Shown here one piece after another: positions 22,491-60,996 of a DNA stretch of 64,000 bases; within the stretch, counting starts at the first letter, position 1; each line of letters begins with the position of its first letter. The DNA is taken from the IMG/VR virus record IMGVR_UViG_3300020380_000001, positions 242,501-306,500 of that record; one strand, written 5' to 3'. A model generated the notes under the pieces. The model was not told the DNA's origin. It saw nothing but the letters and a program-made list of their open reading frames with translations, and did no database searches. A program made the position numbers and the translations under genes.

Positions 22491-22526
22491 GTAACATTTT
22501 AAAATGTTACTAGATCTTGTAACATT
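22491..22526. repeat. three alternating GTAACATT units, including a perfect 20-bp palindrome
   Basis: GTAACATTTTAAAATGTTAC (22491-22510) and AATGTTAC-8 nt-GTAACATT (22503-22526). Confidence 0.75.
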
Positions 22527-24642: not shown

Positions 24643-25854
24643 TTATGCCTCCGCTCCTTTGTTTGCTTTTTTCTCTTCGAGTAGGAATCTGAACTTAGCT
24701 TCACGACGCATCAAGCTGTACACTGCGCTCTTTTTCCAAGCGTTAGGGTTACGACGTGCTAGTCCGCCGATTTTAAGCGCTGTACGGATGCTAACTTCAT
24801 CCAAGTCATGCATATAAACATTCAGGAAGTCAACGATTTCTTGCTTCATGTCGTCACTCAGTTCCAAACGGTTTTTCTCAAACAGTCCAGTACTCACTAA
24901 GCTTTTGATTCTGCGAATTTTATCTTCGACTGTACCGATTTCCAAATCATAGTACAAGCTTCTTGACTTAAGTGCATCCAAGTGAGGTTTAATACGCACA
25001 CTACGAACACGATCAAAGTCAAGGTTAGAGATAAATATCACACTACCGCAGAAGTCAAACTGTCGTGGAACCCCTTCTTCTTCAAGGATACGCGACTCAG
25101 CCATCCAGCTAATTGTGCGTTTATGGTCAGTATCAAGTGCCGCTTTTAAAATGTTTAAGCTAACGTCGTCATAAAACAAAGTATCACAGTCATCAAACAC
25201 CAATACTTGACCTTTGTCTCTGTACTGAAATAGCTCTTGATAAAGCGCTATCGGGGTTATTGTACCTTTAATAACGCGATATGTACGTTCTTCAGAACCA
25301 AACGGGTTAGTAGCTGTGTGGTCGCCTGACAGGAACATGCCGTTCGTGCATAAAAAGCGGTAGTAGTCTTTGGCTACTGCGTTCACTAAGTGACTTTTAC
25401 CGATACCAGCAGGGCCACTAATAATCATGCTTGACACGTCACCTTCACACACCGACCAAGCGATATCACGTAGTATATCAAAGCTTTGCTCAATGCGCTC
25501 AAGTGCTTCTTCTTCAGTCTCAGAATTACGGTACGCTAGTTCGTAGCTTGTGTCGTCACAAGCTTCACCAACCGCCTCAGCGATTGCTGTTTTCTGCGCT
25601 TGGGCTTTTTTAGCGTCTTTCATTGCTTTGCTTTGCAAAGTAATTGTTTCACCGTCGTATTCTTCTAAAAACTCAAAGTTTTCAACGTCGTCGGAAAAAA
25701 CACGCTTGCCTTTCTTCTGCATTGGAACAGGAACAGTAACGTAATATGAATTTTTAACAGGAAGGAAAGTTGCAGAATTAGAGGTAGTTTCTAAAACACC
25801 GTTTAGTTCAGAATCGCCAGTAGTAGTCCAGCCATCAACAATACGTACAAACAT
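24643..25854 (-). CDS. phage AAA+ ATPase
   Basis: Walker A ISGPAGIGKS, Walker B VLVFDDCD, LNILKAALD, IFISN, ALKSRS arginine finger. Confidence 0.88.
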   Translation of the reverse strand: MFVRIVDGWTTTGDSELNGVLETTSNSATFLPVKNSYYVTVPVPMQKKGKRVFSDDVENFEFLEEYDGETITLQSKAMKDAKKAQAQKTAIAEAVGEACDDTSYELAYRNSETEEEALERIEQSFDILRDIAWSVCEGDVSSMIISGPAGIGKSHLVNAVAKDYYRFLCTNGMFLSGDHTATNPFGSEERTYRVIKGTITPIALYQELFQYRDKGQVLVFDDCDTLFYDDVSLNILKAALDTDHKRTISWMAESRILEEEGVPRQFDFCGSVIFISNLDFDRVRSVRIKPHLDALKSRSLYYDLEIGTVEDKIRRIKSLVSTGLFEKNRLELSDDMKQEIVDFLNVYMHDLDEVSIRTALKIGGLARRNPNAWKKSAVYSLMRREAKFRFLLEEKKANKGAEA

Positions 25855-26040: not shown

Positions 26041-27177
26041 TTAAGCCAAACCAAGCATCGGTCCGTACTCAACAATGAATTTCGCAAAGTTCTTGTTTTG
26101 AGGCGGTACAATTTGTTCGCGGTTTGCGGCAGTCATGTACTTCGCTCTCCAGCGTCTGATCAGCGAGCTAACAGTAAAGAACGTCATCTCTGAAGTACAG
26201 AACTTTTCACAGAATTCGTACAAGTTGTCGAACATTACGCTCGTGTTAGCGTTGCCGATGCCCGTTTCCTTTTTGTCCTTGTCGTACTGCTCAATCATTT
26301 CAAGCACAGCACCGTAAGTCAAGCTGTAAAACGCTGATTGCTTTTCAATTTTCAAGTTTTTGTCGTAGTTGCCTTCAAGGATTTGTCGCGGAGTTGGTAG
26401 CGAGCTAATGTACTCCATGTGAACAACAAACTCGTTCGCAATACCGTCACCAACAGCACCGGCAACCATTAAGTCAAGTGTTTCGTTGTCAGCTTCACCT
26501 TTTTGTAGGATGTCGCTAACCACTTCCCATGAACGCGGTGTTGCAAAGCTGTACGACTCGTTTTTAAGCGCTTCGTCAAATGTGTTTAAGTGGCTCTTGC
26601 GGTGCATTAAGTAAGCAATAACCTCACGCGCCAAGCCGTTTTCAATTGCCCATTCCTGCCATTCTTCGAAGTTAACTTCAAGATTTACAAAGATAAAGCG
26701 GTTACGTAGCGGCATAGCCATGTCGAAAGTCGCGCCGCGATCTTCTGTTCTGTTACCCGCAGCAACAATATCAACGCCCGGTGGAAGTTCGTAGTCACCT
26801 AGCTTGCGATCAAGTACTAGCTGATAAGCTGCCGACTGTACAAGAGGCGGTGCAGTGTTAAGCTCGTCAAGGAAAATAATAGCGTTAGCTAGTTTTTCGT
26901 TAGTAGGAAGCGTTGACGGCTCTGCCCATTCCATCTTTTTAGTCTCTGGGTCAAAGTAAGGTACACCACGAATATCGGTGCTGTCAAACTGTGCTAGACG
27001 CATGTCAATTACTGGACGGCCTGAGCGGCTTGCAATTTGTGCAATAATTTGGGATTTACCTACACCAGGCTGTCCCATAATCATAATAGAACGCTTGATA
27101 CGGAATGCTGTTTCAACGCACTTAACAAGTGATTTCGGCGTTGCTTTGCGTGTGGTGTCTATACTATTCTCTGACAT
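26041..27177 (-). CDS. MoxR-like (AAA_5) ATPase
   Basis: GQPGVGKS, IDMRL.QFD.TDIRGVP, IIFLDELN.A...VQ.AAYQL.LDR, AAGNR..D, PL.NRF, ATPRSWE. Confidence 0.92.
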   Translation of the reverse strand: MSENSIDTTRKATPKSLVKCVETAFRIKRSIMIMGQPGVGKSQIIAQIASRSGRPVIDMRLAQFDSTDIRGVPYFDPETKKMEWAEPSTLPTNEKLANAIIFLDELNTAPPLVQSAAYQLVLDRKLGDYELPPGVDIVAAGNRTEDRGATFDMAMPLRNRFIFVNLEVNFEEWQEWAIENGLAREVIAYLMHRKSHLNTFDEALKNESYSFATPRSWEVVSDILQKGEADNETLDLMVAGAVGDGIANEFVVHMEYISSLPTPRQILEGNYDKNLKIEKQSAFYSLTYGAVLEMIEQYDKDKKETGIGNANTSVMFDNLYEFCEKFCTSEMTFFTVSSLIRRWRAKYMTAANREQIVPPQNKNFAKFIVEYGPMLGLA

Positions 27178-27271: not shown

Positions 27272-30200
27272 TTATTTTTTATCGACACTTCCGTCTATAT
27301 TGATTATGAACTGATCACCGTTAAACGGGTTGTCTATTTGTTTAAGTACGCCCAAGTCGCCAGGTATTGTTCTATCTGTTCTCAAGTCCCATGCTTCTGT
27401 ATCGAAGTTATAAACGTAAACCTGATCAGTTTGTACTACATATACAGTACCTTGATCAAAAGCACCTTCTAAATATATGTTAGACCAAGTACTGCTTCGC
27501 TGGCTGCGGTTCGCATATCCATAACTATGCGGCTCATTTCCTACCCATGCTAATTCTGGATATTGTTCAGTATCCACTTCTATTAGTGAGTTAGGATTAT
27601 CCTTAGGGTCACCGTTAGGATTGCCGCGCGTTGTTACCCACATACGTATAATAGGACCATCGCGTTCTATACGACAACGCCTTGCACTTGTGCGCCATTC
27701 GTTCACACCGTTATGTGTGGCAGTATAAGGCGCAGTAATAGTGAGTACCGCTTCTACCAAGTCATTTGGTCTAGCCGCATTCGAGCGAACATACACAAAA
27801 GCCCATCCTATATCATTAGTCATGCCATCATAGGTGTAGCCGTTTTGTGTATTATACGCAAGTAAAGAATGGTTAATTGAGCCTTCACGCTTAAAGGCAG
27901 CAATCATATCAATCTCATCGTCGTCGTTATCGTCAGAAGAAAGAGTAGCCTCAAAAGTCAAACTACTTGTTTTATCCGGGCTAACAAAGCCAGTCAAGTT
28001 AGGATGGTTCTCTGTGCCGATTATTTGCTCAAGTGCTGCGTCATAATAGTATGAATCAGCACCGTTATCCGCAGCGGTCCCGCCCGGATAGTAATAGCCG
28101 TTAGAGATACGGTCCCAATTGTTGAACACCTCAGCCGGCGTAGGCGCGTTATAGTCACGCATATATGTCTGAGCCTCAGACAGTGTTTCGAACATAAGCG
28201 CTTGTTGGATAGGTAGTACCGCTGCTGAAATTGTAACTATGCCTTCATGGTTAGTAGCCAACAACCTTTCTTCTAAGTTCGTTATAGCCACACGGAACTG
28301 TTCTTCTGTTTCAGTAACATTATCACGCAACACACGAACGGATATATTCTTAACGCTGTCACCTTCATTAAACGTTACTGACGCATTAGTCACATTGAAG
28401 TCCGGCTCAAGCACGGTGTTGTAGTTCTCAATCTCTGCTGTATTTGACAACCCAGCATGGCTGCCGGTTAACTGCTCTAGTCCGTCTATAATAGGATTGC
28501 CACCGTATGTTGCTCGATAGTTGTCAAAGTTAGTAGCAACAAGAGAGCGATGTACGCTACCCTTAAAGTTAGCATAAAACCTACGAGCAAGGTTATTGGC
28601 GTTGGCAACGTATCCGGACGATCCTGTGTCATTACCGTTAGACGTCACTATATACAGGCCTACTTTATCACGGCGCACTGCGCTTTCGATAGCATCACCT
28701 AGTAAACTAGATATATTTCCGGGGTAATCCTGCGATAAGCTACTAACGAAAATAATTGCGCCATAGTTAGATAGCGTTGTTGGATCCACTTCACTGATAT
28801 ATTTGGTGCTTATTATATACCCGGCTTCGTTTAACAAATTGCGCATGGCTTTGCCGTACGAGGTGCTCGTAGTGGTATCTTTCACACTCAGGGAGCTTTC
28901 GTTATCACCAAGTATAAGAACGTTAGATTTGCCAGTGCCGTATGTTAGGAAGTCCATTATATTCCTAAACATTTTATATTCAACCGTATTGTTTGACGGA
29001 CGGTCATCCCATGTACTGTTTCTGTACTTTTGAACAGACGGGTCAAACACAACTTTAATATCACTGAAGTCGCAGTACATTAAGCCCGTTCTTCCTGACG
29101 TATCGCTGAACGCTTCCTGTGGGCGCGACACTGTACTGTTAGCTCTAGCCGTTTCATCCACAGTAGAGTAATTAACAGTTATATTACGACCCTCGACAGG
29201 CTCGCTCGCAATTATCTGCAAGTCAACATCAATATACGCACTGTCTTCCGGCTCCGATACCGTAGCTGACGTGATACGGAACTTAGGATAGTTAACAAGG
29301 TTTCGTATTGTAAAGGTTGCATTGCCGTCAACCACTTCACCGGTGTCATTGTCTGTTACTTCTAAATTAATAGTTACTTCAGTATCATCCGGCACATCAA
29401 AAGTAGTAAGAAGCGCATTTAATAAATGCGGGGCTGAGATGCTGTAAAAACTATTGCCAGACACTTGGCTCCACTGGTAGCTAAAATTGCCGCTGCCGCC
29501 CGTAATAACTGGCACTAAGCCAAGTCCCGCGTCTTGTTGATTCTCGTCCACAGACATTGAGTTCATACGCAGAGCTAGGCGCTCACGTGTGTCAATTACG
29601 TTAATAGTTGATTCTGCCAGGTACTCTTCCCATGAATATAAATCAATGACGCGCACTTGCAACACAAGGGATTCGTTCTCGTAAAATACAGGGTTGGTAC
29701 CTGCGTTCAATACGGCTACAAGCTGGTCAGGATCTGTTATGGTAAGGTCCATGCCGGGTTCACTTGTGCTCAGTATGCGCCAAGCATAGTTAAACGCATT
29801 AGAGCCGCCTGTTACTGTAACCAAGTCTGCCAAGTTTAGCGACGAGCGGTGATCCATAGTAGCGCCATCCAACGTAACAGTGGCTTCTGAAACTTCGTAA
29901 CCGTCTTGCTCGTCTAAGTGAGTAACAACTGTATACTCTGGCTTAGAGTCAGTCATGTCAATATTGGCCACACTATACGAGTGGTCAACGTTTATTCTAA
30001 ACTCGCCGCCTATTGGCTGTGTTTCAGGGTCACTATGACATAATACCCTAAACGAAACAAAGTTAGCCTGAACTGCCGTCTGTAGCGCGTTCAGTTGTAT
30101 GCCTGGATCGCCCGGACCAAATTTGGCTTGGACTTCAATACGATTGGAAGTGCCCGCGTCATAATATCCGCTCGGCAGGCTATACTCATAAACAGTTTGG

Positions 30201-31057
30201 TACTCGTTAGTCAAGTCATAAAAGCCCAGAATATTTCCCGTACCCACACTGTTTTCAGAAGTCATGCCATACACTGTGAACTTAAGCGCACCGACATTGT
30301 CAACTAGTGTCTGCCACTTTGCATTTTCTGCGGGGTCGCCTGGCGGTGGTCCCTCAAGCGGATCAGTGTCATAATAACTAGGCGCGTCGTATGAATCAGG
30401 TTCAGTATAAGTAGGCGTTACAATAATACTTGAGCCGGCATTAAAGAAGTACCTAGCCAAGTTGTATTCATCCCAAACAGCTTCGAACTCAAATTCCAAG
30501 CTTTCTGACCATAGCTTTGTACGAGTACTTGAAGCGCCGAAGCCGTCAACCGTGGTTAGCAAATTACCGGGTTCCACAGTAAAGCGCTTCGCAGCAATGT
30601 TTTCCATAAGCGTAGTGAGCGGGGCGGCAGTGCGTTGATCATGGGCGTAAATCAGCTCGCCTTGTTGAATATCAGCAGGGAACGAATCTGTGATTGTTTG
30701 CCTTTCAGTTTCACCTAGATTAATGTGGTTAACTAGCTTGCGAATTATGCCCGCAAGGGTGCCCCACTCTTGCTGAAACTTGTACTTGTAATCAGCAGTA
30801 GAGCCTGTCGTTGTACCCGACACAAGGTCTGAAATATCACTTACTTTGCCCGAGCCGTCACTTGCATTTTCAGGGGCAATGACATCCGAACGACCGTAAC
30901 CAAAGCCGCCATCGTTTATGCCAGTTTCACCTAAGTGACGATCATTATATAGTTCATTAACAATAAACGCAAAGCCGTTATAGTCTTCAGCATCTATCGA
31001 TCCGCCTTCTACATAAGACGCCATTAATTCTAAAATGTTATTTTTTGTTGCTGCCAT
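27272..31057 (-). CDS. virion fibre/appendage protein (1261 aa): shared N-domain, 2 Ig/PKD-like repeats, split Calx-beta, lectin-like tip
   Basis: N-domain paralogous to neighbours (DYN..GFGYG..RYFFNAG); GGS..F.Y.W repeats; Calx-beta motifs VNYSTVDETA and TF.EGDSVK.I.V....D...E.EE.F. Confidence 0.8.
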   Translation of the reverse strand: MAATKNNILELMASYVEGGSIDAEDYNGFAFIVNELYNDRHLGETGINDGGFGYGRSDVIAPENASDGSGKVSDISDLVSGTTTGSTADYKYKFQQEWGTLAGIIRKLVNHINLGETERQTITDSFPADIQQGELIYAHDQRTAAPLTTLMENIAAKRFTVEPGNLLTTVDGFGASSTRTKLWSESLEFEFEAVWDEYNLARYFFNAGSSIIVTPTYTEPDSYDAPSYYDTDPLEGPPPGDPAENAKWQTLVDNVGALKFTVYGMTSENSVGTGNILGFYDLTNEYQTVYEYSLPSGYYDAGTSNRIEVQAKFGPGDPGIQLNALQTAVQANFVSFRVLCHSDPETQPIGGEFRINVDHSYSVANIDMTDSKPEYTVVTHLDEQDGYEVSEATVTLDGATMDHRSSLNLADLVTVTGGSNAFNYAWRILSTSEPGMDLTITDPDQLVAVLNAGTNPVFYENESLVLQVRVIDLYSWEEYLAESTINVIDTRERLALRMNSMSVDENQQDAGLGLVPVITGGSGNFSYQWSQVSGNSFYSISAPHLLNALLTTFDVPDDTEVTINLEVTDNDTGEVVDGNATFTIRNLVNYPKFRITSATVSEPEDSAYIDVDLQIIASEPVEGRNITVNYSTVDETARANSTVSRPQEAFSDTSGRTGLMYCDFSDIKVVFDPSVQKYRNSTWDDRPSNNTVEYKMFRNIMDFLTYGTGKSNVLILGDNESSLSVKDTTTSTSYGKAMRNLLNEAGYIISTKYISEVDPTTLSNYGAIIFVSSLSQDYPGNISSLLGDAIESAVRRDKVGLYIVTSNGNDTGSSGYVANANNLARRFYANFKGSVHRSLVATNFDNYRATYGGNPIIDGLEQLTGSHAGLSNTAEIENYNTVLEPDFNVTNASVTFNEGDSVKNISVRVLRDNVTETEEQFRVAITNLEERLLATNHEGIVTISAAVLPIQQALMFETLSEAQTYMRDYNAPTPAEVFNNWDRISNGYYYPGGTAADNGADSYYYDAALEQIIGTENHPNLTGFVSPDKTSSLTFEATLSSDDNDDDEIDMIAAFKREGSINHSLLAYNTQNGYTYDGMTNDIGWAFVYVRSNAARPNDLVEAVLTITAPYTATHNGVNEWRTSARRCRIERDGPIIRMWVTTRGNPNGDPKDNPNSLIEVDTEQYPELAWVGNEPHSYGYANRSQRSSTWSNIYLEGAFDQGTVYVVQTDQVYVYNFDTEAWDLRTDRTIPGDLGVLKQIDNPFNGDQFIINIDGSVDKK

Positions 31058-34000
31058 TATGACCTTTCACTTATTGTTCTTGTAGACACTGCTCGTATTT
31101 CATAATACTCAGTACCGCTTACTACCACAGCCAGGGTGTCTGCAACTGAATCCCATTCAATAAATATACCTGCGCTCGGCGCAGTGTGCGGGTTACCCTT
31201 AGACGACATTGTGTAGCCGTCGGGTGCTACCATGTAATATTTATTACCAGTGGCGTTCGCATTAGTGAGTACGTTAGTAAACAAGTCGCGGTAATTACTT
31301 GGCAAATAAAAGTAGCCGAATGTTAAAAACTCTGCATTCTCTAGTGTTGTGCCACCGTGCGAGTTTGTTCCTCTACATTGTGCCCATACACATATTTCTA
31401 TGTCATTTGTTGCGCTTGCTACTGATGCAGGCAAGTCGTACTCAACATTTACCTTATTCCAAGTATCAACCGATGTTGCTTGTAACAGTAAGGAAGAGTA
31501 GTCAACCGGCGCATAAGACCTTTCCATAACGCTAACAATATTAGGCAGTGGGGTGCCAGTATTATCCAACAGCTCACATAACCTAACCGTGCCATCAAAC
31601 GTAAGTACCAAACGATACGTAGGTGAGCACTCAATAACAGCGACATAATTGTCAGTGCTACGCACGTCATAAGTAGACATGCCGCTTGAACTGAATATAC
31701 TGTCGTCTAAAACAAAGTGATACTGAGTAGATAAAATATCAGTATTGCCCAGCGCACTTGTGTCAACTGTTACCATATATTCTTTGCCTGAGTCCCAATT
31801 AAATGAACTCACATTAGGCGCGACAACCTCTGTCCAAATTTGGTTGGTTGCTGTACCTGCAGGGGCTGTATTACCTGCATTATTGTAATAAACAGGCCTT
31901 TCGTTTAGTTCAAGTATTTGTGAGCCAGTACTAATGTCAGGAATAGTTTTAAATTTAGACCTGTTTGTCTTCCAATCAGTGTCAGTATCTCTATCAGTCG
32001 GACCCCTAAATATAGCCGATATACCAACTGACTGGCTACGTGACGATCCGCCTATTACTATCTCACTAGCAGGTGTTGCCGACGAATTAAACGGCTGTAA
32101 TACTTCATAAGCAGGGACTATTCTGTTCGAAACTAAACTTACCAAATCAGTATTTGATGCGCCTCTATCAGTTACACTTAATAAGGCATACTCGTGGATG
32201 CCGCCTCTAAACGTATTGTGGTTCACTGCGAAACCATCTTGCTCTTGATAAGGCTGTGCACGTTCAGTTTTTGGCTCAATCCAAATAGTAGCAGGATAGT
32301 CGCCATTGTCGATTGTGCTTAGGCCAGATCCACTGTAATAATTTACCCAACTAAAGTTAGCGTTTTCAATCGTTACCGTAGCACTGAAATTAGCTGTACG
32401 ATTGGCAGTGGTGTCAGAAACAGTCACATCAACAGTAATTGTCTGTGATACGCCAAGATCAGGAATCGTTAACGTTGGGTTAGCTGCGGCTGGATCATCA
32501 ATTGTAATGCCCTGGTTACTCGGATTAAACGACCAAGCGTAGGTGTAATCACCGGAGCCACCAGCTAAGTTATCAATTGACATCACGGTAGTGTCATCAT
32601 CATTGACAGTTTTGTCGTTTAGTGTACCGGTAATCTGTGGCCAATTGTAATTGACATCGAATATAATCTCATTACTTGCCTGCACAGTGCCTTCGTCGTC
32701 AGTTACTACTAATGTTAGTGTTTTAGTTTGCGGTGTGCTGTCACCATCGATAGCGCCAGTAAACGTTAAATCAGTCCCGGTAACATTTACGTCAGCCGGG
32801 GTAGTCCATGCGTACGAGTAAGGTGCGTAACCGCCGCTAATTGATATTAACGAACTCAAATTATACGTTGAATCATGTAACATTGTGAACGACGGTGATG
32901 CGTTACTGCCGTTACCTAACGTAACAGATAAAGGTGTTGTTTGATCACTAACGGTAATCTCGGATACAACTTGCTCTACTTCGCCGGTATTATCATCTGT
33001 TACGGTTACGCGTACAGGAAGCACAAAAGTATAGTCAACATAGTCAACATCAATTACCGGTGTGCTGCCAGAATCAGTCACGTTGTACACGTCAATAAAA
33101 CGGGCAGTGTTGCCTGCTGAATCAAGTACTGGCGTATTTTTATCATATGCCCAGCTTACACTGTAAGATCCGGAACCGCCAGTCACACCTAAATAATCAC
33201 CAAGTGTTATTGCTGATTTTTCAGTCATGCTGTTAGCAGTAAACACAACTTCAAGAGGCGGTACATTGTTGTTTATTGTTATTGTGCTTGACGCAGTAAC
33301 CACTTCACCAGATTCGCCTAAGTCAGTAACAGTGATTTGATAATCAACTGCCTGAGGCTCAGTGCCGCCGATATAATCACTGGTATAAACTGACCCAACA
33401 AGGTTACCGTATCCCGGCGTTAGAATTTCATACACCACGTCAAGCGGTCCGTTACCGCCTGAATATGATATAACAGTACTCAAGTCAACGCTCTGTGTCT
33501 CGTCAACTGAAACAGTACCCGCGCTCGCAGTAACAGGTGGCGTCAAATCATATACGTTCACAGTAGCAGTGTCAGTCACAGTTGTACCGTCACCCGTGTC
33601 AGTTACTTCAACAATAAGAGTAAACGCCTTATCGCCCACGGCTTCTGTAACTTGGATTTGCGGCGCTTCTATATCAGTGGCAGTTATGAAAGAGTACAGG
33701 GAGTCATTAACCGGGAAAACAGACCACTCATATGTGAAGGGTCCTATACCGCCGGTGCGGTTTAGTTTGCCGGCCAAGTCAAGTACCGCATTTTCATCAA
33801 CATCGTATGAGTCTTGATTTAAGCTCGCACTGAATGGCGCAGTCGTGTCTTTTACAAGTATGACGCCGTATGCTGTTACTTGTTCATTTAACACTGTATC
33901 AGTAACAGTAAGGGTCATTTGAACTGCGCGGTCACTGTTTACGTTGGCTGCTGTAATTTGCGCGTTAAGACTAGCACTGTCATCTATTGTCAGGAAACTA

Positions 34001-35370
34001 GCAGAGTAAGACCAGCTATACGCATATGAACCAGATCCGCCAGTTAAGGTAACAAGACTCCCCAAGTTATAACTTGTTTCTTCATCCAACGTTACATCAT
34101 CAACGGATAGTTCCATTTCCGGCGTAGTATCAGTCACCGATAGCGTAACAGTAAAATCATAAGTTTGGCGCGTTACAATATCATACACGTTGAGATTAAA
34201 GTCAACATCATATGCAAAATAATAACTGCCATTGTAAGTGGGCGTAAACAGAGCGCGTAACTTGTCGTCGTCTGTTAACGTATGACCGGCAGGGAGTTCA
34301 CTAGGCGGTGCTGGGATTGACCAAAGGAACTCAAAGTCGCCTGATCCACCAAGCACAGAAACCACAGTTGACATATCAACGTCAACATCATCTTCAGTTA
34401 TTGATAGTACTTGTTGTGACACTTGCACTGGTTGATATACTACCGCGTCTACTGAGTCTAGTCCAGTAACAATAACAGACGATGGCAGTAATGGCCTAAA
34501 TTCATCACTAGCATATACCAAGTCAATATTCACATACAACTCAGTGCCAACCGGGTTACCCGAAATGTCCAGGTACCTTACACGGATATAGATGTCTTTG
34601 TCAACTCTACGTAACTGAACACTAACAGAGTTACCATCCACATCTTCTAAACGATAGATTGTACTGAATGTACTGCTAAGTGAATAAAACCCAATGTTAT
34701 CGGCAGGCTGTTCACTATTAGACAATGTTGTGTTATTAAAGTCAACTACTATTTCAGGGAAATTAGGCAATAATGATTCCCAAGCTGCGTTGCTTGATGG
34801 GTTACCAGTACTGCCAGGCGCAAAGTCTGCGTTAATCTTTATCTTGCCACCAGTGTTAAAGAAGTAACGCATATCCTTATAACTATTAAACACTAATCGT
34901 GACTCGTGCTGGATCGCACTTTCCCAAAGTTCTGTTCTCGAAGATGCGCCATAAACGCCTCCAGAGCTGCTAGAAACTCTATTAACGGCAACGTTAAATC
35001 TATTGTCGCTAATTTGATCTAGGGCGTCTGTGATCTTCTTCGGGTCACTTACGAATGCACTAATAATGTCGTTAACTGCTGGATTACTGTCATCAGTCAA
35101 TACGTCATCAACTGAAATATCATCTTCCAACACTGTGCCTTGGTGTGCTGCGATACGGTTAATATTGTTGATTAACTCAACCCATTCACTAGCGGTTATA
35201 AGTTGCTCATCAAACTTAGTTGTAAAAGACTCAACTTTACCGTAACCGAAACCCGCAACGTTTACGCCGCTAGCAGTTCTACTCGCGACATCACCTATTA
35301 GCTTTTCTACAGTTTCCTGAAAGCCATTGAAGTGTTCGTTTTCAATTAAATTGTTTATATTATAACTCAT
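31057..35370 (-). CDS. virion fibre/appendage protein (1437 aa) with about 7 tandem Ig/PKD(SprB)-like repeats
   Basis: Shared N-domain (HFN..GFGYG..I.ASEW..HQGT..SRT..W..MRYFFNTGG); seven GG.G/AP.Y.Y.W repeats about 100 aa apart. Confidence 0.82.
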   Translation of the reverse strand: MSYNINNLIENEHFNGFQETVEKLIGDVASRTASGVNVAGFGYGKVESFTTKFDEQLITASEWVELINNINRIAAHQGTVLEDDISVDDVLTDDSNPAVNDIISAFVSDPKKITDALDQISDNRFNVAVNRVSSSSGGVYGASSRTELWESAIQHESRLVFNSYKDMRYFFNTGGKIKINADFAPGSTGNPSSNAAWESLLPNFPEIVVDFNNTTLSNSEQPADNIGFYSLSSTFSTIYRLEDVDGNSVSVQLRRVDKDIYIRVRYLDISGNPVGTELYVNIDLVYASDEFRPLLPSSVIVTGLDSVDAVVYQPVQVSQQVLSITEDDVDVDMSTVVSVLGGSGDFEFLWSIPAPPSELPAGHTLTDDDKLRALFTPTYNGSYYFAYDVDFNLNVYDIVTRQTYDFTVTLSVTDTTPEMELSVDDVTLDEETSYNLGSLVTLTGGSGSYAYSWSYSASFLTIDDSASLNAQITAANVNSDRAVQMTLTVTDTVLNEQVTAYGVILVKDTTAPFSASLNQDSYDVDENAVLDLAGKLNRTGGIGPFTYEWSVFPVNDSLYSFITATDIEAPQIQVTEAVGDKAFTLIVEVTDTGDGTTVTDTATVNVYDLTPPVTASAGTVSVDETQSVDLSTVISYSGGNGPLDVVYEILTPGYGNLVGSVYTSDYIGGTEPQAVDYQITVTDLGESGEVVTASSTITINNNVPPLEVVFTANSMTEKSAITLGDYLGVTGGSGSYSVSWAYDKNTPVLDSAGNTARFIDVYNVTDSGSTPVIDVDYVDYTFVLPVRVTVTDDNTGEVEQVVSEITVSDQTTPLSVTLGNGSNASPSFTMLHDSTYNLSSLISISGGYAPYSYAWTTPADVNVTGTDLTFTGAIDGDSTPQTKTLTLVVTDDEGTVQASNEIIFDVNYNWPQITGTLNDKTVNDDDTTVMSIDNLAGGSGDYTYAWSFNPSNQGITIDDPAAANPTLTIPDLGVSQTITVDVTVSDTTANRTANFSATVTIENANFSWVNYYSGSGLSTIDNGDYPATIWIEPKTERAQPYQEQDGFAVNHNTFRGGIHEYALLSVTDRGASNTDLVSLVSNRIVPAYEVLQPFNSSATPASEIVIGGSSRSQSVGISAIFRGPTDRDTDTDWKTNRSKFKTIPDISTGSQILELNERPVYYNNAGNTAPAGTATNQIWTEVVAPNVSSFNWDSGKEYMVTVDTSALGNTDILSTQYHFVLDDSIFSSSGMSTYDVRSTDNYVAVIECSPTYRLVLTFDGTVRLCELLDNTGTPLPNIVSVMERSYAPVDYSSLLLQATSVDTWNKVNVEYDLPASVASATNDIEICVWAQCRGTNSHGGTTLENAEFLTFGYFYLPSNYRDLFTNVLTNANATGNKYYMVAPDGYTMSSKGNPHTAPSAGIFIEWDSVADTLAVVVSGTEYYEIRAVSTRTISERS

Positions 35371-35380
35371 ATTCTACCTT

Positions 35381-36472
35381 TTAAGGTGGCGTAATAACGT
35401 CGGGTTCTGCCTCATCCAAAGCAGTCATAAGGTTTACAGTAGGGGTCGGCGACGGCGCGTTAGTGTCAACACTGGTTGTATGATCAACATACACTGTAAG
35501 CAAGCCGTCCGAGTACGTTTCTCCAGGCTCACTAATAAACTCAACCTTAAACTGAATCGTATACGCCGATGCAGGAATAGTGTTTAGGCGCGCATACACA
35601 CGCACAACATCCTGACCATTATCGTAGTCGCCTACTACCCTGTATATTTCACGCCAAGCTGTCACACCGCCTGCCATTATTCCGTAAAAGCCGGAACCCA
35701 GCGTTATTGTTCCAAAACTGTCGCCTAGTTCACGATAAACGCGGTCTGCACTTATTACAATACGCCCGATATCTTCTAAGCGTTCTTGCCAAATAGCATT
35801 GTACTCGTGGGTGTAAAAATAGTTCTGTTCGTACGGAGTGTCGTAATACACAGTGCCGTCTGGTGTTCCGCCAGACTTTTCAAACTCAAGTAGTATTTTA
35901 CTACCCGTGTTGAAGTAGTGACGCATTTCGTCAAAGTCGTTGAATGCGAACTCAAATTCCAGATTTATTTGATCAGTCCAAGGACGGGTTCTAGACTCAG
36001 TAAGCATGGTGCCACCAACCGTAGTAAACGACTTTGCAGGCGAAAGCTCAAAACGATTAGCCCTTACGTATTCCATCACAGCAATCATGCCTTGCTGGGC
36101 ATCATCATACGAGATGACATAATCACCTACGTTTACTACGTCAGGCATCTCGCTCACTGTGCCTTGGTGTTGCACGACTCTATCAATAGCAACTAGTAAT
36201 GAAGTCCACTCAGCTGCGCGAATAATTTCGTCAGTTTGCTTAATAGGAATAGTCACAGGAGATCCGTAGCCGAATCCGCCTTGTAGTATGCTAGAGTTGC
36301 CTTGGTTACTGTCGCCTATGACCTCGTTAATCTCAGACGCCAATAAGTTGAAGTCTTCTGCGCGAATGACCCCCTCTGGGTGATACGTTGTATCATAAGC
36401 AAAATTTTGATTAGGCGGTACATTTCTTTCGTCGCCTGGCACGTACGGTGTGCGCAATGAATCATCGGCCAT
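35381..36472 (-). CDS. virion structural protein (363 aa), shared N-domain only
   Basis: DFN..GFGYG..IIRAAEW..HQGT..SRT.PW..MRHYFNTG. Confidence 0.82.
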   Translation of the reverse strand: MADDSLRTPYVPGDERNVPPNQNFAYDTTYHPEGVIRAEDFNLLASEINEVIGDSNQGNSSILQGGFGYGSPVTIPIKQTDEIIRAAEWTSLLVAIDRVVQHQGTVSEMPDVVNVGDYVISYDDAQQGMIAVMEYVRANRFELSPAKSFTTVGGTMLTESRTRPWTDQINLEFEFAFNDFDEMRHYFNTGSKILLEFEKSGGTPDGTVYYDTPYEQNYFYTHEYNAIWQERLEDIGRIVISADRVYRELGDSFGTITLGSGFYGIMAGGVTAWREIYRVVGDYDNGQDVVRVYARLNTIPASAYTIQFKVEFISEPGETYSDGLLTVYVDHTTSVDTNAPSPTPTVNLMTALDEAEPDVITPP

Positions 36473-36502
36473 ATAGTCACTAAACCCTTTAATCTTTTCG
36501 TG

Positions 36503-36509
36503 TATTTAG
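36503..36509 (-). promoter_or_regulatory. late promoter motif CTAAATA
   Basis: 31 nt upstream of ATG 36472. Confidence 0.7.
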
Positions 36510-36526
36510 TGACTATCAGACCGATA

Positions 36527-37330
36527 TTATTTACATGAAGGTTTCTTTACGGGGAACAGAGCAGGGCAATAAGCAACATCATATCCAGTTGTCACAGTGC
36601 CTTGGACCGTTTTGTTGTTGAGAATCTCAATATCAGTGTAGACAAATACATTGTCCCACTCGACTCTAGCATCAATTTTGATACGCACGTATTTGCCATC
36701 ATAACGATAGACGGTTGTGCGCTTAGTGCCAATATCCATTATACCGATATTATGGCCAGTACCCGCATACGATGTGGCAGTGTCACCGAAACGTAAACGA
36801 ACAGTACCCACTTCCCTATCAAACTTAGCTAGTTCAGTAGAGTAAAGCGACGATGCTAGACGACTACCATCAATAGTCACAGCAAGGAACCCGCCCAATT
36901 TAAAAAAGTTCTTCATATGTTTGAAATCATCAAACACGTAAGTCGCTTGTGATCCAAATGTGGATTTGGGATTCTTGTGCTTTATAAGCTTTAGTTCACC
37001 AGGTCCAGTAGCTGCGATATAAGACGCGCTAACTTTTAGGCCTTTACCGGCTTCTTGTTGCTGTTTAAAGTGTTGTGAGATTGTTTCTATGTTTCCGAGC
37101 ATGGTGCTTTTTTCAGGCAAGCCAAGTAGAGTTAACAGCTTTGCAACTTCTCGCTCAAAATGAGCGCATGCATCCGCGTCAGCCTCTTTTAAAGGCGACA
37201 CTAGAGGTATGGGCTGTGCGCCGATACCCCTAAACTTGTCTGCTTTAGTGATTGGTTTTTCAGAATCAACCACTAATTTGTTGAACAAGATGGCACATGT
37301 ATTATATTCAGTACCATGCACGTTATACAT
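36527..37330 (-). CDS. divergent basic paralog of the fibre N-domain family (267 aa)
   Basis: MYNVHG.EYN, RGIG, FDDFKHMKNFFKLGG, VG.VR, G.G.NIG..DI. Confidence 0.7.
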   Translation of the reverse strand: MYNVHGTEYNTCAILFNKLVVDSEKPITKADKFRGIGAQPIPLVSPLKEADADACAHFEREVAKLLTLLGLPEKSTMLGNIETISQHFKQQQEAGKGLKVSASYIAATGPGELKLIKHKNPKSTFGSQATYVFDDFKHMKNFFKLGGFLAVTIDGSRLASSLYSTELAKFDREVGTVRLRFGDTATSYAGTGHNIGIMDIGTKRTTVYRYDGKYVRIKIDARVEWDNVFVYTDIEILNNKTVQGTVTTGYDVAYCPALFPVKKPSCK

Positions 37331-38124
37331 TATAGCACGAACCTCGTAACAGCTTCAACAAGTTTTTCACCTTGTTCACTTGAACGACCAAGTGCGCGGC
37401 CAATTACTTCAGGAGAACTACGGTGGCCAACTTCTGCACAACCAGGGAATTTACGTGAAGCAACCAAGTAGTCACCTACAAGAACTTCGCCAACTACACG
37501 AACAGGAACTCGTCCAGCAAGTGCTACCGGCAACCATTCATCTGCGCCTGTCTCTTCAGTTGCATTCATTAAGAAAGCAGGTGCTGTTGACACTACACCA
37601 AACGGAATGTCGCCACTTTGTGTAAACTCAGTGATTTCTTTTTCGCCACCAAGCATAACAATTGTGCCAGGCTCATACACCTTATCTGCATGGTATTTTT
37701 CTGCAATATCCGCGTAACGTGCACGGGCTGCTGTACCAGAGAACTCTTGGGCGTATACAGTACAGAATTCTAATGTACTTGACCCGATATTGTGCTCACC
37801 ACCTGAACAGTTCTGTGAAGGTAAAATGTTACCGTCAAAGATATAGTTCTGACCTTCTTTAAACGGGAAACTGATCCAGTCACTGCCTTTACGTAGCTTG
37901 AATTCAGATTCAGCAATATCCCACCAAGTTTGCCCTTCTGTTGGGTTAAGAGGTTCGGATCCGCTTGCTGAGTTTTCTAGGATCTGTAGCATGGCTTTCA
38001 TAACATGCTCGCCATATCCGGTTGTGTTACGGCCCACTAACGGGATTGAAAATTGTTCTGTATCAACTGTGCTGTCGTTGATAGTGACAGCGCGTCCATC
38101 ACTTAAATTAATTAGATATGCCAT
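37330..38124 (-). CDS. short tail-fibre/baseplate protein with C-terminal intramolecular chaperone (peptidase G2-like) domain
   Basis: N-terminal MAY.IN..DG, L.GRN..GYGE, LEN.A...P.NP..GQ.W.D; C-terminal ADIAEKY..D..YEPGT, GVVST.PA..MN, PVALAGRVPV.V.G. Confidence 0.8.
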   Translation of the reverse strand: MAYLINLSDGRAVTINDSTVDTEQFSIPLVGRNTTGYGEHVMKAMLQILENSASGSEPLNPTEGQTWWDIAESEFKLRKGSDWISFPFKEGQNYIFDGNILPSQNCSGGEHNIGSSTLEFCTVYAQEFSGTAARARYADIAEKYHADKVYEPGTIVMLGGEKEITEFTQSGDIPFGVVSTAPAFLMNATEETGADEWLPVALAGRVPVRVVGEVLVGDYLVASRKFPGCAEVGHRSSPEVIGRALGRSSEQGEKLVEAVTRFVL

Positions 38125-38132
38125 GATTATCC

Positions 38133-38723
38133 TTAGCTCATTTGCACTCGTATGGTGTATTCAATTTCTAGTATCCTGTTAGCTGATTTCAACACTGGGT
38201 GAAATCTAACGTGACTTAGCATTATGCCGCTTGAGTCTTTAAGTGCTAGTTCATTGAAAACATATTCGTTATTAAAATCTGTTAAGTCGTCCAAATCCAG
38301 TTGGTTTCCGTATGCGTTGCCGTCTTCGTCTACTTGTTCAGAATTAGGTTCACCAGATGCCAAGGTTACCACTACACGTAAGTCGGCATTGGCGCCGTTT
38401 ACTGTTTCGACGTAGCTGTCCGGACCACTGTTCTGCACGTCTTTTTGGTATGTTTCATTATAAAGCGCGGCTTGCTCGTCATACACTTCACTGACATTGG
38501 GTTCTGCGTATAAAACAGTACCGTCAGTTTGTATGCTTGCGCCACCGTTACCGAAAGCCATATACCTAATATGACCACTGTCATCACCGGATAAGGCACG
38601 AACGATAGCTGCGCTCATATTACCGTAGTGAATAGCGTTTGATTTACTAACTAATACCTCGCCAGTAATTTTATCACGCACTGTCAAATGCCCGTTTATT
38701 GGCAGTTCAGCTATATTAAACAT
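38133..38723 (-). CDS. virion/baseplate protein (196 aa)
   Basis: GHL.VRD..TGEVLV.K.NAIHY.N, MAFGNGG, L..GEP, FNEL.L, HV.FHPV.KS.NR..EI.YT.R; lies in the baseplate module. Confidence 0.8.
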   Translation of the reverse strand: MFNIAELPINGHLTVRDKITGEVLVSKSNAIHYGNMSAAIVRALSGDDSGHIRYMAFGNGGASIQTDGTVLYAEPNVSEVYDEQAALYNETYQKDVQNSGPDSYVETVNGANADLRVVVTLASGEPNSEQVDEDGNAYGNQLDLDDLTDFNNEYVFNELALKDSSGIMLSHVRFHPVLKSANRILEIEYTIRVQMS

Positions 38724-38725
38724 TG

Positions 38726-38875
38726 TTATCCTCTACTCTTAACGATTGCGGTTCCAGACTCTTTGTCTCTAATTAAAATAAAATCTTTGACGTCGCCCTG
38801 GAATTTATCGTTCGGCTTTGTTTCTTTATTGCTATTTAGCCCGGAAAAACCCGGGCTATTGTTGTCTTTATGCAC
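38726..38875 (-). CDS. 49-aa small structural-module protein (GTG start)
   Basis: Not in the ORF track. SD AAGGGA; MHKDNNSPGFSGLNSNKETKPNDKFQGDVKDFILIRDKESGTAIVKSRG*; fills the gap between two structural genes. Confidence 0.65.
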   Translation of the reverse strand: MHKDNNSPGFSGLNSNKETKPNDKFQGDVKDFILIRDKESGTAIVKSRG

Positions 38876-59155: not shown

Positions 59156-59956
59156 ATGTCAAACACCGATAATTCGCACTACCTGAAAAACCGCGAAATG
59201 ACAGCGGAAATCAACAAGTGCAAATACACTTATTGTCATTTCATTTCACCAGAATACCAGAGATACGAAGGAATTCTCGAGGGTTCGTATAAGGACATTT
59301 TCTCTAAAGCCGTAGACGAGGATGGGGTCGAGTTTCAACCGCATATCGTAAAAGCTGTTAAACGGTACGCTAAAAACAAGCGCAACGAAACAGGCCAAGT
59401 AGTGGCTGTTGAAGATGTTGACTTGAGCGATGTTGTTTTCAGAGTAATGACTGACGAACACATACCTACCGACGAGACAGGCGAGCCCATAAAACTTAAC
59501 TTCCCTGCTTTCAAGCATTACATTGTAACCGACTTAGAAAAGGAAGAGGTTAAAGAAGTGGGTAAGAGCCACCACTCAGACGAAAATACGTTTTCGATGA
59601 CACACGGCAAAACTTCCAATAAACTGGGAGAGATTTACCTACTTATGGTTAATCGCTATGGCGGCCGCTATAATTGGCGCGGGTACTCTTATCTTGATGA
59701 TATGAAAGGCCAAGCACTTACACAATTAGCAAAAGTTGGCTTGATGTTCAACGAAGCTAAGGGCACAGATCATCCAAACCCGTTTGCTTATTACACTACT
59801 ATTATTAAACGTTGTTTTAGTAAAGTAATAAAAGACGAGAAACGAGTGAGCGAGATTCGCGACAGCTTGTTAATGGACGCAGATCGTGACCCAAGTAACG
59901 CTAAGCAACTTGAACTAGAATCAGCTTACCGTAACCGCTATAGTGAGGACGACTAA
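59156..59956 (+). CDS. late-transcription sigma factor, T4 gp55-like
   Basis: HYL.N.E, NWRGYSY.DDMKG.AL, FNE.K..NPFAYYT.II..CF...I..EK; upstream of gp47/gp46 as in T4-like phages. Confidence 0.85.
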   Translation: MSNTDNSHYLKNREMTAEINKCKYTYCHFISPEYQRYEGILEGSYKDIFSKAVDEDGVEFQPHIVKAVKRYAKNKRNETGQVVAVEDVDLSDVVFRVMTDEHIPTDETGEPIKLNFPAFKHYIVTDLEKEEVKEVGKSHHSDENTFSMTHGKTSNKLGEIYLLMVNRYGGRYNWRGYSYLDDMKGQALTQLAKVGLMFNEAKGTDHPNPFAYYTTIIKRCFSKVIKDEKRVSEIRDSLLMDADRDPSNAKQLELESAYRNRYSEDD

Positions 59957-60978: not shown

Positions 60979-60996
60979 CCAGCTCTAGGAGTTACT

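What the first reader, a model, noticed from the sequence alone, without database searches (positions are those of the whole stretch)
27272..37330. Four tandem paralogs share one anchor domain with graded Ig-like stalks and different tips
Seen: proteins of 267, 363, 1437 and 1261 aa share a ~270-380-aa N-domain (xN..GxG..W..HQGT..SRT..W..F..MRyFFNtG). They carry 0, 0, about 7 and 2 GGxG-x-Y-x-W repeats respectively, and the two long ones end in unrelated C-terminal domains. Inference: a modular appendage system (branched fibres, whiskers or hairs) where paralogous anchors co-assemble and display different adhesins at different distances. The basic 267-aa member may be the adaptor for the acidic ones.
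Basis: partly seen in the sequence, partly recalled or inferred. Interest (0 to 1): 0.6.

Follow-up and report, generated by a model that had tools for sequence, protein, structure and literature searches.

The report
Four paralogous baseplate fibre proteins
An uncultured 306-kb marine jumbo phage has four neighbouring genes that share a previously unnamed, virus-only attachment domain. Two of them extend it with 7 or 2 Ig-like repeats and different tips, so they are most likely host-binding fibres hung from the tail baseplate.

Summary
Proteins of 363, 1437 and 1261 aa share a ~300-380-aa N-domain (BLASTP 4e-24 to 7e-37). The basic 267-aa protein is a degenerate fourth member, seen only by profiles (hhalign 99%, E 2.7e-18). 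The long proteins carry exactly 7 and 2 SprB/PKD-like repeats and have unrelated C-termini.

The array ends a T4-like baseplate gene module: hub, gp25, gp6-like, a 3504-aa giant protein, a 196-aa protein, then a 264-aa short fibre with an autoproteolytic chaperone domain. The N-domain defines a large virus-only family (1595 representative clusters) with no Pfam, PHROG or PDB match. Its predicted fold is a helical subdomain plus a jelly-roll.

In 65 of 73 related loci the family gene directly follows a homologue of the short fibre, and in two proteins the two domains are fused. The Pseudomonas phage PA5oct homologue (gp123) was detected in virions. The 1261-aa protein ends in a domain shared with annotated tail fibres of 32 jumbo phages, and this is the fastest-evolving segment.

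Best reading: baseplate-anchored adhesin fibrils of two conserved lengths. Co-assembly of the paralogues and an adaptor role for the basic member remain untested. This is a new variant of a known kind.

The parts
38133..38723 (-). P0008, a 196-aa conserved small protein of the module. It sits between the giant baseplate protein and the short fibre. Function unknown.
   Evidence: phrog_11259. Homologues lie upstream of the family genes in 65 related loci. It is the PA5oct gp126 homologue, which is flagged ESI-MS/MS. A profile search of the PDB found nothing.
37330..38124 (-). P0007, a 264-aa minimal short fibre. It has an N-terminal fibre-type domain (aa 1-~88, motif GYGE...P.NP..GQ.WWD) and a C-terminal Peptidase_G2 intramolecular-chaperone autoproteolysis domain. 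It is the likely docking partner of the array. Its stop codon overlaps the P0001 start by one base.
   Evidence: Pfam PF11962 at 5.5e-8 and 32.9 bits, above the cut-off of 25. Tail-fibre PHROGs. A homologue ends a median of 12 nt upstream of the first family gene in 65 of 73 loci. It is homologous to PA5oct gp124 and gp125; gp125 is annotated 'T4-like gp10'. Its N-domain is fused to the family domain in RsoM2USA_355 and P0132.
36527..37330 (-). P0001, 267 aa, pI 9.07. A degenerate, basic member of the N-domain family with the domain only.
   Evidence: hhalign A2 against A5 gives 99.0%, E 2.7e-18, covering residues 6-264. The family HMM hits only its jelly-roll half at 3.6e-8. The L086 orthologue hits at 1.4e-29 and has pI 9.03. 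dN/dS is 0.032.
35381..36472 (-). P0002, 363 aa, pI 4.27. The N-domain alone, with a ~28-aa disordered N-terminus.
   Evidence: Family HMM 1e-75. AF2 model with pLDDT 85 and pTM 0.84: helical subdomain 38-138 and beta-sandwich 148-350. The L086 orthologue carries an extra ~260-aa C-terminal domain (621 aa).
34456..35370 (-). P0003 N-domain (aa 1-305).
   Evidence: BLASTP 4e-24 to P0002 and 7e-37 to P0004. Family HMM 1.5e-70. dN/dS 0.031.
32359..34440 (-). P0003 stalk: seven ~100-aa SprB/PKD-like (Ig-like) repeats, aa 311-1004.
   Evidence: Motif GG.G.Y.Y.W at 341, 444, 540, (638), 731, 846, 937. Repeat HMM finds 7 domains with i-E 1e-19 to 1e-33. Pfam SprB at 27.6 bits against a cut-off of 28. 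phrog_2973 'Hoc-like' 1e-8. The L086 orthologue also has seven repeats.
31060..32358 (-). P0003 tip: a 433-aa C-terminal region (aa 1005-1437) of unknown fold.
   Evidence: No Pfam, PHROG, PDB or cultured-phage match. Found only in close relatives. It is 35-48% identical per 100-aa block (about 38% overall) to the L086 orthologue. The AF2 model failed with pLDDT 41.
29903..31057 (-). P0004 N-domain (aa 1-385, with two insertions relative to P0002). Its start overlaps the P0003 stop by one base.
   Evidence: BLASTP 2e-24 to P0002 over 383 columns. Family HMM 2.2e-69. dN/dS 0.017.
29297..29899 (-). P0004 stalk: two SprB/PKD-like repeats (aa 387-587).
   Evidence: Repeat HMM i-E 4e-31 and 4e-34. 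Weak Pfam K319L-like PKD and SprB hits. The L086 orthologue also has two.
28178..29296 (-). P0004 middle region (aa 588-960). It looks like a Calx-beta domain split by an uncharacterised insert of ~245 aa (aa ~642-885).
   Evidence: Pfam Calx-beta profile positions 55-114 match aa 886-942 at 4.2e-9 and 36.9 bits, above the cut-off of 27. Profile positions 13-54 match aa 596-641 at E 0.031, which is weak. The insert has no match.
27275..28177 (-). P0004 tip (aa 961-1261): a tail-fibre domain shared with many jumbo phages and the fastest-evolving segment of the array.
   Evidence: phrog_21285 at 1.6e-18 and phrog_33406 'tail fiber protein' at 4.1e-12. tblastn finds 32 jumbo-phage records, including PaBG_00248, AR9 g012, PBS1, Lu11 and PhiPA3. 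dN/dS is 0.143 against 0.017 for its own N-domain, and the tip is 84-91% identical to L006 where neighbouring genes are ~98%.

Best explanation
The four genes encode the distal, host-facing set of baseplate proteins of a T4-like-baseplate jumbo myovirus.

Each protein starts with the same ~300-aa module, a helical subdomain followed by a jelly-roll beta-sandwich. This module belongs to a large, virus-only, so far unnamed family. It docks the protein at the baseplate periphery, most likely on or beside the trimeric stub left when the neighbouring short fibre P0007 cleaves off its C-terminal chaperone.

Tandem duplication in this lineage produced four non-redundant copies.
- Two are the bare module: P0002 is acidic, and P0001 is basic and degenerate.
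- P0003 continues into a chain of seven Ig-like repeats (roughly 25-30 nm, inferred) and a unique 433-aa tip.
- P0004 continues into two repeats, a Calx-beta domain with an inserted domain, and a tail-fibre tip shared with other jumbo phages.

The long proteins act as flexible adhesin fibrils that make the first, probably carbohydrate-directed, contacts with the host at two fixed reach distances.

Shown: the homology, the architecture, the gene context, and virion presence of a homologue in one cultured phage.
Inferred: the docking site, the oligomeric state, the binding targets and the physical lengths.
For: Gene context. The window reads hub/VgrG-like, gp25, gp6-like (1310 aa), giant 3504-aa virion protein, P0008, P0007, then the four paralogues. 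All are co-directional, with 1-base stop/start overlaps or short gaps.

Conserved gene couple. A P0007-like gene ends a median of 12 nt upstream of the first family gene in 65 of 73 related viral loci. The giant protein and P0008 are also syntenic.

Domain fusions. The P0007-type N-domain is fused directly in front of the family domain in RsoM2USA_355 (8e-19 and 7e-44) and in P0132.

Virion presence. PA5oct gp123 (family), gp124 and gp125 (P0007-like), gp126 (P0008-like) and gp128 (giant) all carry ESI-MS/MS notes. The paper reports 93 gene products linked to virion particles (PMC7318152).

Family-wide architecture. The domain starts at residue 2 in nearly all of the 150 best hits. Of these, 93 are 370 aa or shorter and 57 carry C-terminal extensions up to 3136 aa, including PKD and SprB repeats that begin right after the domain.

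Tip and selection. The P0004 tip matches tail-fibre PHROGs and annotated tail fibres. It has the highest dN/dS (0.143), while the anchors have the lowest (0.017-0.031).

Age of the array. All four paralogues have one-to-one orthologues in L086 (SH-aLRT 94-100), with the same repeat numbers at 37-39% identity.
Against: - There is no direct evidence that these particular proteins are in virions or where they sit.
- The N-domain matches no solved baseplate or fibre structure. Foldseek found none at E<=1e-3, and the best VIA Z is 7.0, to a CspB protease jelly-roll.
- Most family members are the bare domain. Its jelly-roll is weakly galectin/CBM-like (Z 4-5), so the module may bind receptors itself rather than only anchor.
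- The oligomeric state is unknown, and chains of Ig-like domains are usually monomeric, unlike classical trimeric fibres.
- The genome has other fibre-like genes (for example G000 220434-222848), so these may be accessory.
- The Ig-like assignment rests on sub-threshold or weak Pfam hits plus a Hoc-like PHROG hit, not on a model.
Confidence: 0.6

Rival explanations
1. The four N-domains co-assemble into one hetero-oligomeric branched fibre, and the basic 267-aa paralogue is the adaptor that glues the acidic ones together and to the baseplate.
For: - The basic charge of P0001 is conserved in its orthologue (pI 9.03) although only 21% of residues are. The other three are strongly acidic (pI 4.0-4.4).
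- All four copies have been retained since before the split from L086.
- The 1-base stop/start overlaps between P0007 and P0001, and between P0003 and P0004, suggest coupled expression.
- Ancient retained tandem pairs occur in other clades.
Against: - In most other phages the tandem pairs are both acidic, so charge complementarity is not a family rule.
- 43 of 81 loci have a single copy, so the domain does not need a paralogous partner.
- P0001 has lost most hallmark motifs of the helical half.
- No complex prediction could be run.
Confidence: 0.2
2. The shared domain is itself the receptor-binding unit: a lectin-like jelly-roll on a helical shoulder, analogous in layout to small siphophage baseplate receptor-binding proteins. 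On this reading the C-terminal extensions are accessory adhesins added later, and the array is four alternative receptor binders rather than one anchor with different cargoes.
For: - 93 of the 150 best family representatives are the bare ~300-aa domain.
- The second half of the AF2 model is a beta-sandwich with weak galectin, CBM and tail-fibre-tip matches, Z 4-7.
- In RsoM2USA_355 and P0132 the domain sits distal to a fibre-type N-domain.
Against: - The N-domains are the most conserved parts of the array (dN/dS 0.017-0.031), whereas receptor-binding surfaces usually evolve fastest.
- The structural matches are at noise level for this aligner (notes).
- The polypeptide continues out of the sandwich into long stalks in many lineages.
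Confidence: 0.15
3. The proteins are Hoc-like decoration proteins of the capsid or tail sheath (hairs or whiskers), not baseplate fibres.
For: - phrog_2973 'Hoc-like head decoration' hits P0003 aa 835-1001 at 1e-8.
- Ig-like chains are typical of decoration proteins (general knowledge).
- Related jumbo phages such as CBB are described as hairy (from memory, not checked here).
Against: - The PHROG hit covers only Ig-like repeats.
- The genes sit at the distal end of the baseplate module and are coupled to a fibre gene in 65 of 73 loci.
- The P0004 tip is a tail-fibre domain.
- The anchor is N-terminal and unrelated to the Hoc capsid-binding domain.
Confidence: 0.05

Closest known systems
Pseudomonas jumbo phage PA5oct gp123 (QCG76005.1, 'hypothetical protein', ESI-MS/MS) and its module gp128-gp123
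   Same: It is a direct homologue of the N-domain (family HMM 4e-58). The gene order is the same: giant protein, P0008-like gp126, P0007-like gp125 and gp124, then the family member. It is virion-associated.
   Different: PA5oct has a single 406-aa copy, with no tandem array, no Ig-like stalk and no long members. It has two P0007-like fibres where this phage has one minimal fibre.
T4 peripheral baseplate network gp10-gp11-gp12 (and gp9)
   Same: The position in the gene order is the same, after the gp6- and gp7-like wedge genes. Small proteins connect fibres to the wedge. The P0007 homologue PA5oct gp125 is annotated 'T4-like gp10'.
   Different: No sequence or fold match to any T4 baseplate protein was found. 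The fibres here are chains of Ig-like domains, not trimeric beta-helical short fibres.
Branched multi-receptor-binding-protein systems with conserved N-terminal docking modules (CBA120 TSP1-4 with gp10-like domains; RaK2, K64-1 and phiKp24 hyperbranched fibres, PMC9700779)
   Same: The logic is the same: neighbouring paralogous genes share a conserved N-terminal attachment module and carry divergent distal parts. PA5oct is reported as related to RaK2-like phages.
   Different: The anchor family is different and unannotated. The distal parts are Ig-like chains with non-enzymatic-looking tips rather than beta-helix depolymerases. Branching or co-assembly is not shown here. This comparison is from general knowledge plus the abstract seen.
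T4 Hoc and other phage Ig-like-domain proteins
   Same: Both have strings of Ig-like (PKD/SprB-type) domains exposed on a virion, presumably for weak carbohydrate adherence. There is a PHROG Hoc-like hit.
   Different: The anchor is N-terminal, 300 aa long and encoded in the baseplate module. There are large terminal tip domains.
Annotated jumbo-phage tail-fibre proteins (PaBG_00248, AR9 g012/PBS1, Lu11, PhiPA3 gp235)
   Same: They share the P0004 tip domain, at 26-31% identity over ~220-280 aa.
   Different: In PaBG_00248 (1217 aa, match at about aa 613-830) and AR9 g012 (651 aa, match at about aa 328-542) the domain lies internally in a differently built protein, and nothing else of P0004 was matched. 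Their 'tail fiber' labels are annotations, not tests.

Membership tests
Unnamed virus-only N-domain family (PA5oct gp123-like; alignment A2) | Significant sequence match to the family profile over the whole ~300-aa domain | tested here: met
   P0002 1e-75, P0003 1.5e-70 and P0004 2.2e-69. P0001 is met only by profile-profile comparison: 99.0%, E 2.7e-18, residues 6-264.
Unnamed virus-only N-domain family (PA5oct gp123-like; alignment A2) | Hallmark motifs G(F/Y)GYG, HQG, RT..W and R(Y/F)FFN(S/T)GG | tested here: met
   Present in P0002 and P0003. P0004 has GFGYG, RT..W and RYFFNAG, but its HQG is split by an 8-residue insertion (H and Q stay invariant columns in A1). Not met by P0001, which keeps only FDDFKHMKNFFKLGG; its L086 orthologue keeps YGYGQ and HQGV.
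Unnamed virus-only N-domain family (PA5oct gp123-like; alignment A2) | Domain at the extreme N-terminus, with extensions only C-terminal | tested here: met
   The best matched stretch begins at residue 2-3 in most of the 150 listed hits. All four window proteins start with it. The exceptions are a few proteins with N-terminal extensions, including the two P0007-N fusions.
Unnamed virus-only N-domain family (PA5oct gp123-like; alignment A2) | Gene immediately downstream of a P0007-like fibre gene | tested here: met
   65 of 73 loci, median gap 12 nt. In the window, P0007 overlaps P0001 by one base.
T4 gp10 / gp11 / gp12 baseplate proteins | Sequence or fold similarity to the T4 proteins | tested here: not met
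   No Pfam hit. No PDB hit by profile for A2, A4 or A6. No T4 baseplate chain among the Foldseek hits or the top 50 VIA hits for the N-domain model. Only the positional analogy and the PA5oct gp125 annotation remain.
Ig-like repeats of the SprB / PKD type | Match to Pfam SprB (PF13573) or PKD models above the gathering score | tested here: inconclusive
   SprB scores 27.6 bits against a cut-off of 28 in P0003. K319L-like PKD scores 16.8 against 27 in P0004. phrog_2973 Hoc-like hits at 1e-8. The family relative P0038 has six bona fide PKD domains. No structure model of the repeats was made.
Calx-beta domain (PF03160) | Pfam match above the gathering score | tested here: met
   P0004 aa 886-942 scores 36.9 bits against a cut-off of 27, but covers only profile positions 55-114. 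Positions 13-54 match aa 596-641 weakly at E 0.031. Together these suggest a split domain.
Hoc-like head decoration protein | Capsid-binding domain and a capsid-module gene context | tested here: not met
   The PHROG match covers Ig-like repeats only. The gene context is the baseplate.
Jumbo-phage tail-fibre tip domain (phrog_33406 / phrog_21285) | Significant match of the C-terminal ~280 aa | tested here: met
   P0004 aa 975-1250 hits at 1.6e-18 and 4.1e-12. tblastn finds 32 phage records. P0003 has no such match.
Fibre with a C-terminal intramolecular chaperone (Peptidase_G2 IMC), for neighbour P0007 | Pfam PF11962 above the cut-off | tested here: met
   32.9 bits against a cut-off of 25, covering aa 105-189. 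Cleavage itself is not testable with these tools.

The most novel reading that the evidence does not exclude
The ~300-aa helical-plus-jelly-roll module is a new, widespread baseplate 'socket' of a large clade of mostly uncultured jumbo myoviruses, and it oligomerises with its own paralogues. In this lineage a basic, degenerate copy (P0001) nucleates a hetero-oligomer of three acidic copies. One baseplate site would then display a bare lectin-like head, a short fibril (2 Ig-like repeats) and a long fibril (7 Ig-like repeats) with different tips: a fixed-geometry, multi-range adsorption device.
Probability: 0.2. Interest if true: 0.6.

Novelty: new variant of a known kind. Interest (0 to 1): 0.45.

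Why it matters
Host recognition by jumbo phages is poorly understood, and most of their baseplate-distal proteins are labelled 'hypothetical'.

This locus gives an anatomy to a domain family found in at least 1595 protein clusters. The family is seen only in viruses and is absent from Pfam, PHROGs and the PDB. It is tied to a specific partner gene (the P0007-like short fibre) and to a virion-confirmed homologue in PA5oct, a cultivable Pseudomonas phage proposed in its paper as a model jumbo phage and phage-therapy candidate.

If the module is the general docking point for variable adhesins, it offers two things. It is a handle for predicting receptor-binding genes in metagenomic jumbo phages. 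It is also a defined junction at which natural fibres have repeatedly exchanged or gained distal parts.

The conserved stalk lengths of 7 and 2 repeats at 37-39% identity suggest that reach distance itself is under selection.

Tried and rejected
- Megablast of the 10-kb region against cultured phages found no match.
- Pfam and PHROG scans of all 64 members of alignment A2 found no family for the N-domain.
- Foldseek against the PDB found nothing at E<=1e-3. BFVD gave only three uncharacterised phage proteins. VIA-align across 48,161 chains gave a best Z of 7.0, which is noise level. The ESM Atlas fold search returned only viral hypothetical clusters.
- Profile searches of PDB sequences with A2 (N-domain), A4 (P0008) and A6 (P0007) found nothing.
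- P0003 tip: the word search found only near-identical proteins. There was no cultured-phage match and no usable Atlas feature hit. The AF2 model on a 3-sequence alignment failed (pLDDT 41) and was not searched.
- The Atlas feature search on the P0004 C-terminal region returned nothing.
Co-assembly is therefore untested, and this is not evidence against binding.
- The sigma-70 promoter and terminator scan, and a search for a T4-type late promoter (TATAAATA), gave nothing above chance. The only clear feature is a hairpin between the giant gene and P0008.
- RsoM2USA ORF356, an abundant 21-kDa virion band (PMC8504454), was checked as a possible P0008 homologue. It is not detectable as one, so that proteomic result does not transfer.
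- The 'moraphage' paper (PMC12619734) showed no link to this phage.
- No supplementary MS tables for PA5oct are held.

Full report
**What is there.** The window is bases 242501-306500 of a 306.5-kb IMG/VR virus record with direct terminal repeats, estimated complete. P0007/P0001 and P0003/P0004 overlap by one base. The other gaps are 54 and 10 nt.

**Checking the observation.**
- P0002, P0003 and P0004 share an N-terminal domain: BLASTP 4e-24, 2e-24 and 7e-37. GFGYG, W, H.Q, R-T..W and R.FFN.G are invariant in alignment A1.
- P0001 is not recognisable by BLASTP (E 0.87) and only partly by a 4-sequence profile (73%).
- A 64-member family profile against a profile of P0001 and its orthologues gives 99.0% probability, E 2.7e-18, over residues 6-264.
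- The positional orthologue of P0001 in relative L086 hits the family HMM at 1.4e-29 and keeps YGYGQ and HQGV. P0001 itself has GIGAQ and has lost HQGT and SRT..W. So there are four paralogues, one of them degenerate.
- A repeat HMM finds seven ~100-aa repeats in P0003 (aa 311-1004) and two in P0004 (aa 387-587), and none in any other ORF of the window. In the rest of the genome a single copy occurs in one 1039-aa protein.
- The two C-terminal regions are unrelated (best E 2.2).
- P0001 is basic (pI 9.07) and the others are acidic (4.05-4.31).
- Against a 94-98% identical relative (L006), every segment has dN/dS of 0.14 or lower, so all four are functional genes.
- The genome contains exactly these four copies.

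**Context.** Upstream on the same strand lie:
- a VgrG/gp27-gp5-like hub;
- gp25;
- a 1310-aa gp6-like wedge protein;
- a 3504-aa virion protein (phrog_10938);
- P0008 (196 aa);
- P0007 (264 aa), which has a fibre-type N-terminal domain and a Peptidase_G2 intramolecular-chaperone domain, with little in between.

Downstream come a MoxR-type ATPase and a protein matching phrog_1250 (unknown function); I read the pair as a MoxR/vWA-type couple, which is a guess. The array therefore closes a T4-like baseplate module, in the position that genes 10-12 occupy in T4 (gene order from general knowledge).

**The N-domain family.**
- A profile search of 1.84 billion representatives finds 1595 clusters at E<=1e-3 and 637 at E<=1e-10. 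The best matched stretch begins at residue 2-3 in most of the 150 best hits. Of these, 93 are 370 aa or shorter and 57 are longer, up to 3136 aa.
- No member hits Pfam or PHROGs.
- An AF2 model of P0002 (pLDDT 85, pTM 0.84) shows a helical subdomain (38-138) and a beta-sandwich (148-350).
- The model has no significant PDB match. It matches only uncharacterised viral proteins in BFVD and the ESM Atlas.
- Among cultured phages, only PA5oct-like Pseudomonas jumbo phages and Ralstonia phage RsoM2USA carry the domain.

**Synteny and fusion.**
- Among 80 related viral contigs, many of them jumbo-sized or fragments carrying the giant gene, a P0007-like gene ends a median of 12 nt upstream of the first family gene in 65 of 73 loci that have upstream sequence. 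P0008 and the giant protein are also conserved.
- In RsoM2USA_355 and in P0132 the P0007-type N-domain is fused directly in front of the family domain.
- In PA5oct, gp128 (giant), gp126 (P0008-like), gp125 and gp124 (P0007-like) and gp123 (family) all carry ESI-MS/MS notes. gp125 is annotated T4 gp10-like (PMC7318152).
- These three lines tie the family functionally, and probably physically, to the P0007 fibre and place it in the virion.

**Evolution.**
- Copy number per locus is 1 in 43 loci, 2 in 35, 3 in 1 and 4 in 2. The two four-copy loci are this phage and L086.
- In a tree of 113 N-domains, each window paralogue pairs with an L086 orthologue (SH-aLRT 94-100). Tandem duplications and C-terminal extensions arose independently in many lineages.
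- The window and L086 orthologues are collinear at 21, 53, 39 and 37% identity and have the same repeat numbers (7 and 2). The L086 P0002 orthologue has gained a ~260-aa C-terminal domain.
- Other family members carry 1-3 of the same repeat type, or PKD domains, immediately after the N-domain.
- Between the near-identical genomes, the anchors are the most constrained (dN/dS 0.017-0.031), the repeats are intermediate (0.057-0.063), and the P0004 tip is the least constrained (0.143, 84-91% identity).

**Tips.**
- The last ~280 aa of P0004 match tail-fibre PHROGs (1.6e-18 and 4.1e-12) and proteins annotated as tail fibre or virion structural in 32 jumbo phages, including PaBG, AR9/PBS1, Lu11 and PhiPA3.
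- Between the P0004 stalk and tip lies what looks like a Calx-beta domain split at profile position 54/55 by a ~245-aa insert.
- The 433-aa tip of P0003 has no relatives beyond its own lineage, and its model failed.

**Interpretation.**
- The best-supported reading is a set of baseplate-anchored proteins built on one docking module. Two of them are flexible Ig-like adhesin fibrils of different, conserved length.
- Hetero-assembly of the four anchors and an adaptor role for the basic member remain open. The conserved basic charge of P0001 (pI 9.03 in an orthologue of 21% identity) is suggestive.
- A serious alternative is that the jelly-roll half of the module is itself a receptor binder.
- A Hoc-like decoration role is unlikely given the gene context.

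**Novelty.** The principle, paralogous receptor-binding proteins sharing an N-terminal docking module, is well known from T4 gp10-type systems and from branched fibres of CBA120- and RaK2-like phages. What is new is the docking family itself: large, virus-only and unannotated. Also new are its tight coupling to a chaperone-bearing short fibre and a four-copy array with fixed-length Ig-like stalks. I rate it a new variant of a known kind, of moderate interest.

Noticed in passing
window 38888-49402 (-): A 3504-aa ORF (phrog_10938 'virion structural protein') sits between the gp6-like wedge gene and P0008. It is homologous to PA5oct gp128, which was MS-detected, and is conserved upstream of the family genes in 45 related loci. 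By position it is presumably a giant gp7-like wedge protein.
   Followed up: partly
window 37330-38124 (-): P0007 is a minimal version of its family. It has the N-terminal fibre domain and the Peptidase_G2 autoproteolytic chaperone domain with almost no shaft between them, whereas homologues are 430-650 aa. After self-cleavage only a ~100-aa stub would remain.
   Followed up: partly
L089 8674-9876 (Ralstonia phage RsoM2USA_355) and protein P0132: These are natural fusions of the P0007-type N-terminal domain with the N-domain family (8e-19 plus 7e-44, and 9e-20 plus 8e-52). This is a Rosetta-stone hint that the two proteins interact where they are separate.
   Followed up: yes
window 26041-27177 and 24643-25854 (-): A MoxR-type AAA ATPase (phrog_1297) and a neighbouring protein matching phrog_1250 (unknown function), which may be a vWA-type partner, lie directly downstream of the fibre array. 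The ATPase also follows the array in L006 and L086. They could be an assembly chaperone pair for the fibres, but this is only a guess.
   Followed up: partly
window 28178-29296 (-), P0004 aa 596-942: A Calx-beta domain appears split by a ~245-aa insert. Profile positions 13-54 match aa 596-641 (E 0.031) and positions 55-114 match aa 886-942 (E 4e-9). The insert has no family match.
   Followed up: partly
L086 10001-11866: The orthologue of the 363-aa P0002 in the ~50%-identical relative is 621 aa, because it has gained a ~260-aa C-terminal domain. The 'bare' anchor can therefore acquire cargo within this lineage.
   Followed up: partly
loci L035, L051, L057, L059 and window/L086: Several loci that contain a long family member also contain one basic N-domain (pI 8.0-9.3), against a family median of pI 4.8. 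This could be chance or a recurring acidic/basic pairing.
   Followed up: no
G000:C1 213134-224946 and 14480-20518 (outside the window): The genome holds further large structural-looking genes. They include an 804-aa protein with many tail and tail-fibre PHROG hits, a 949-aa protein with a head-decoration hit, and a 2012-aa protein with a weak tail-fibre hit. The array studied here is therefore not the only candidate adhesin set.
   Followed up: partly
window 1826-4081 (-), 22525-23970 (-), 59156-59956 (+), 59956-62993 (+): Other genes in the window: a Lon-like ATP-dependent protease (phrog_4871, 2e-203), a 481-aa HNH endonuclease, a T4 gp55-like late sigma factor, and an SbcCD-like nuclease pair.
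   Followed up: no
window 38837-38858: A perfect GC-rich hairpin (TAGCCCGG-AAAAAC-CCGGGCTA) lies in the 164-nt gap between the giant gene and P0008. It is the only clear terminator-like or regulatory structure near the array.
   Followed up: no
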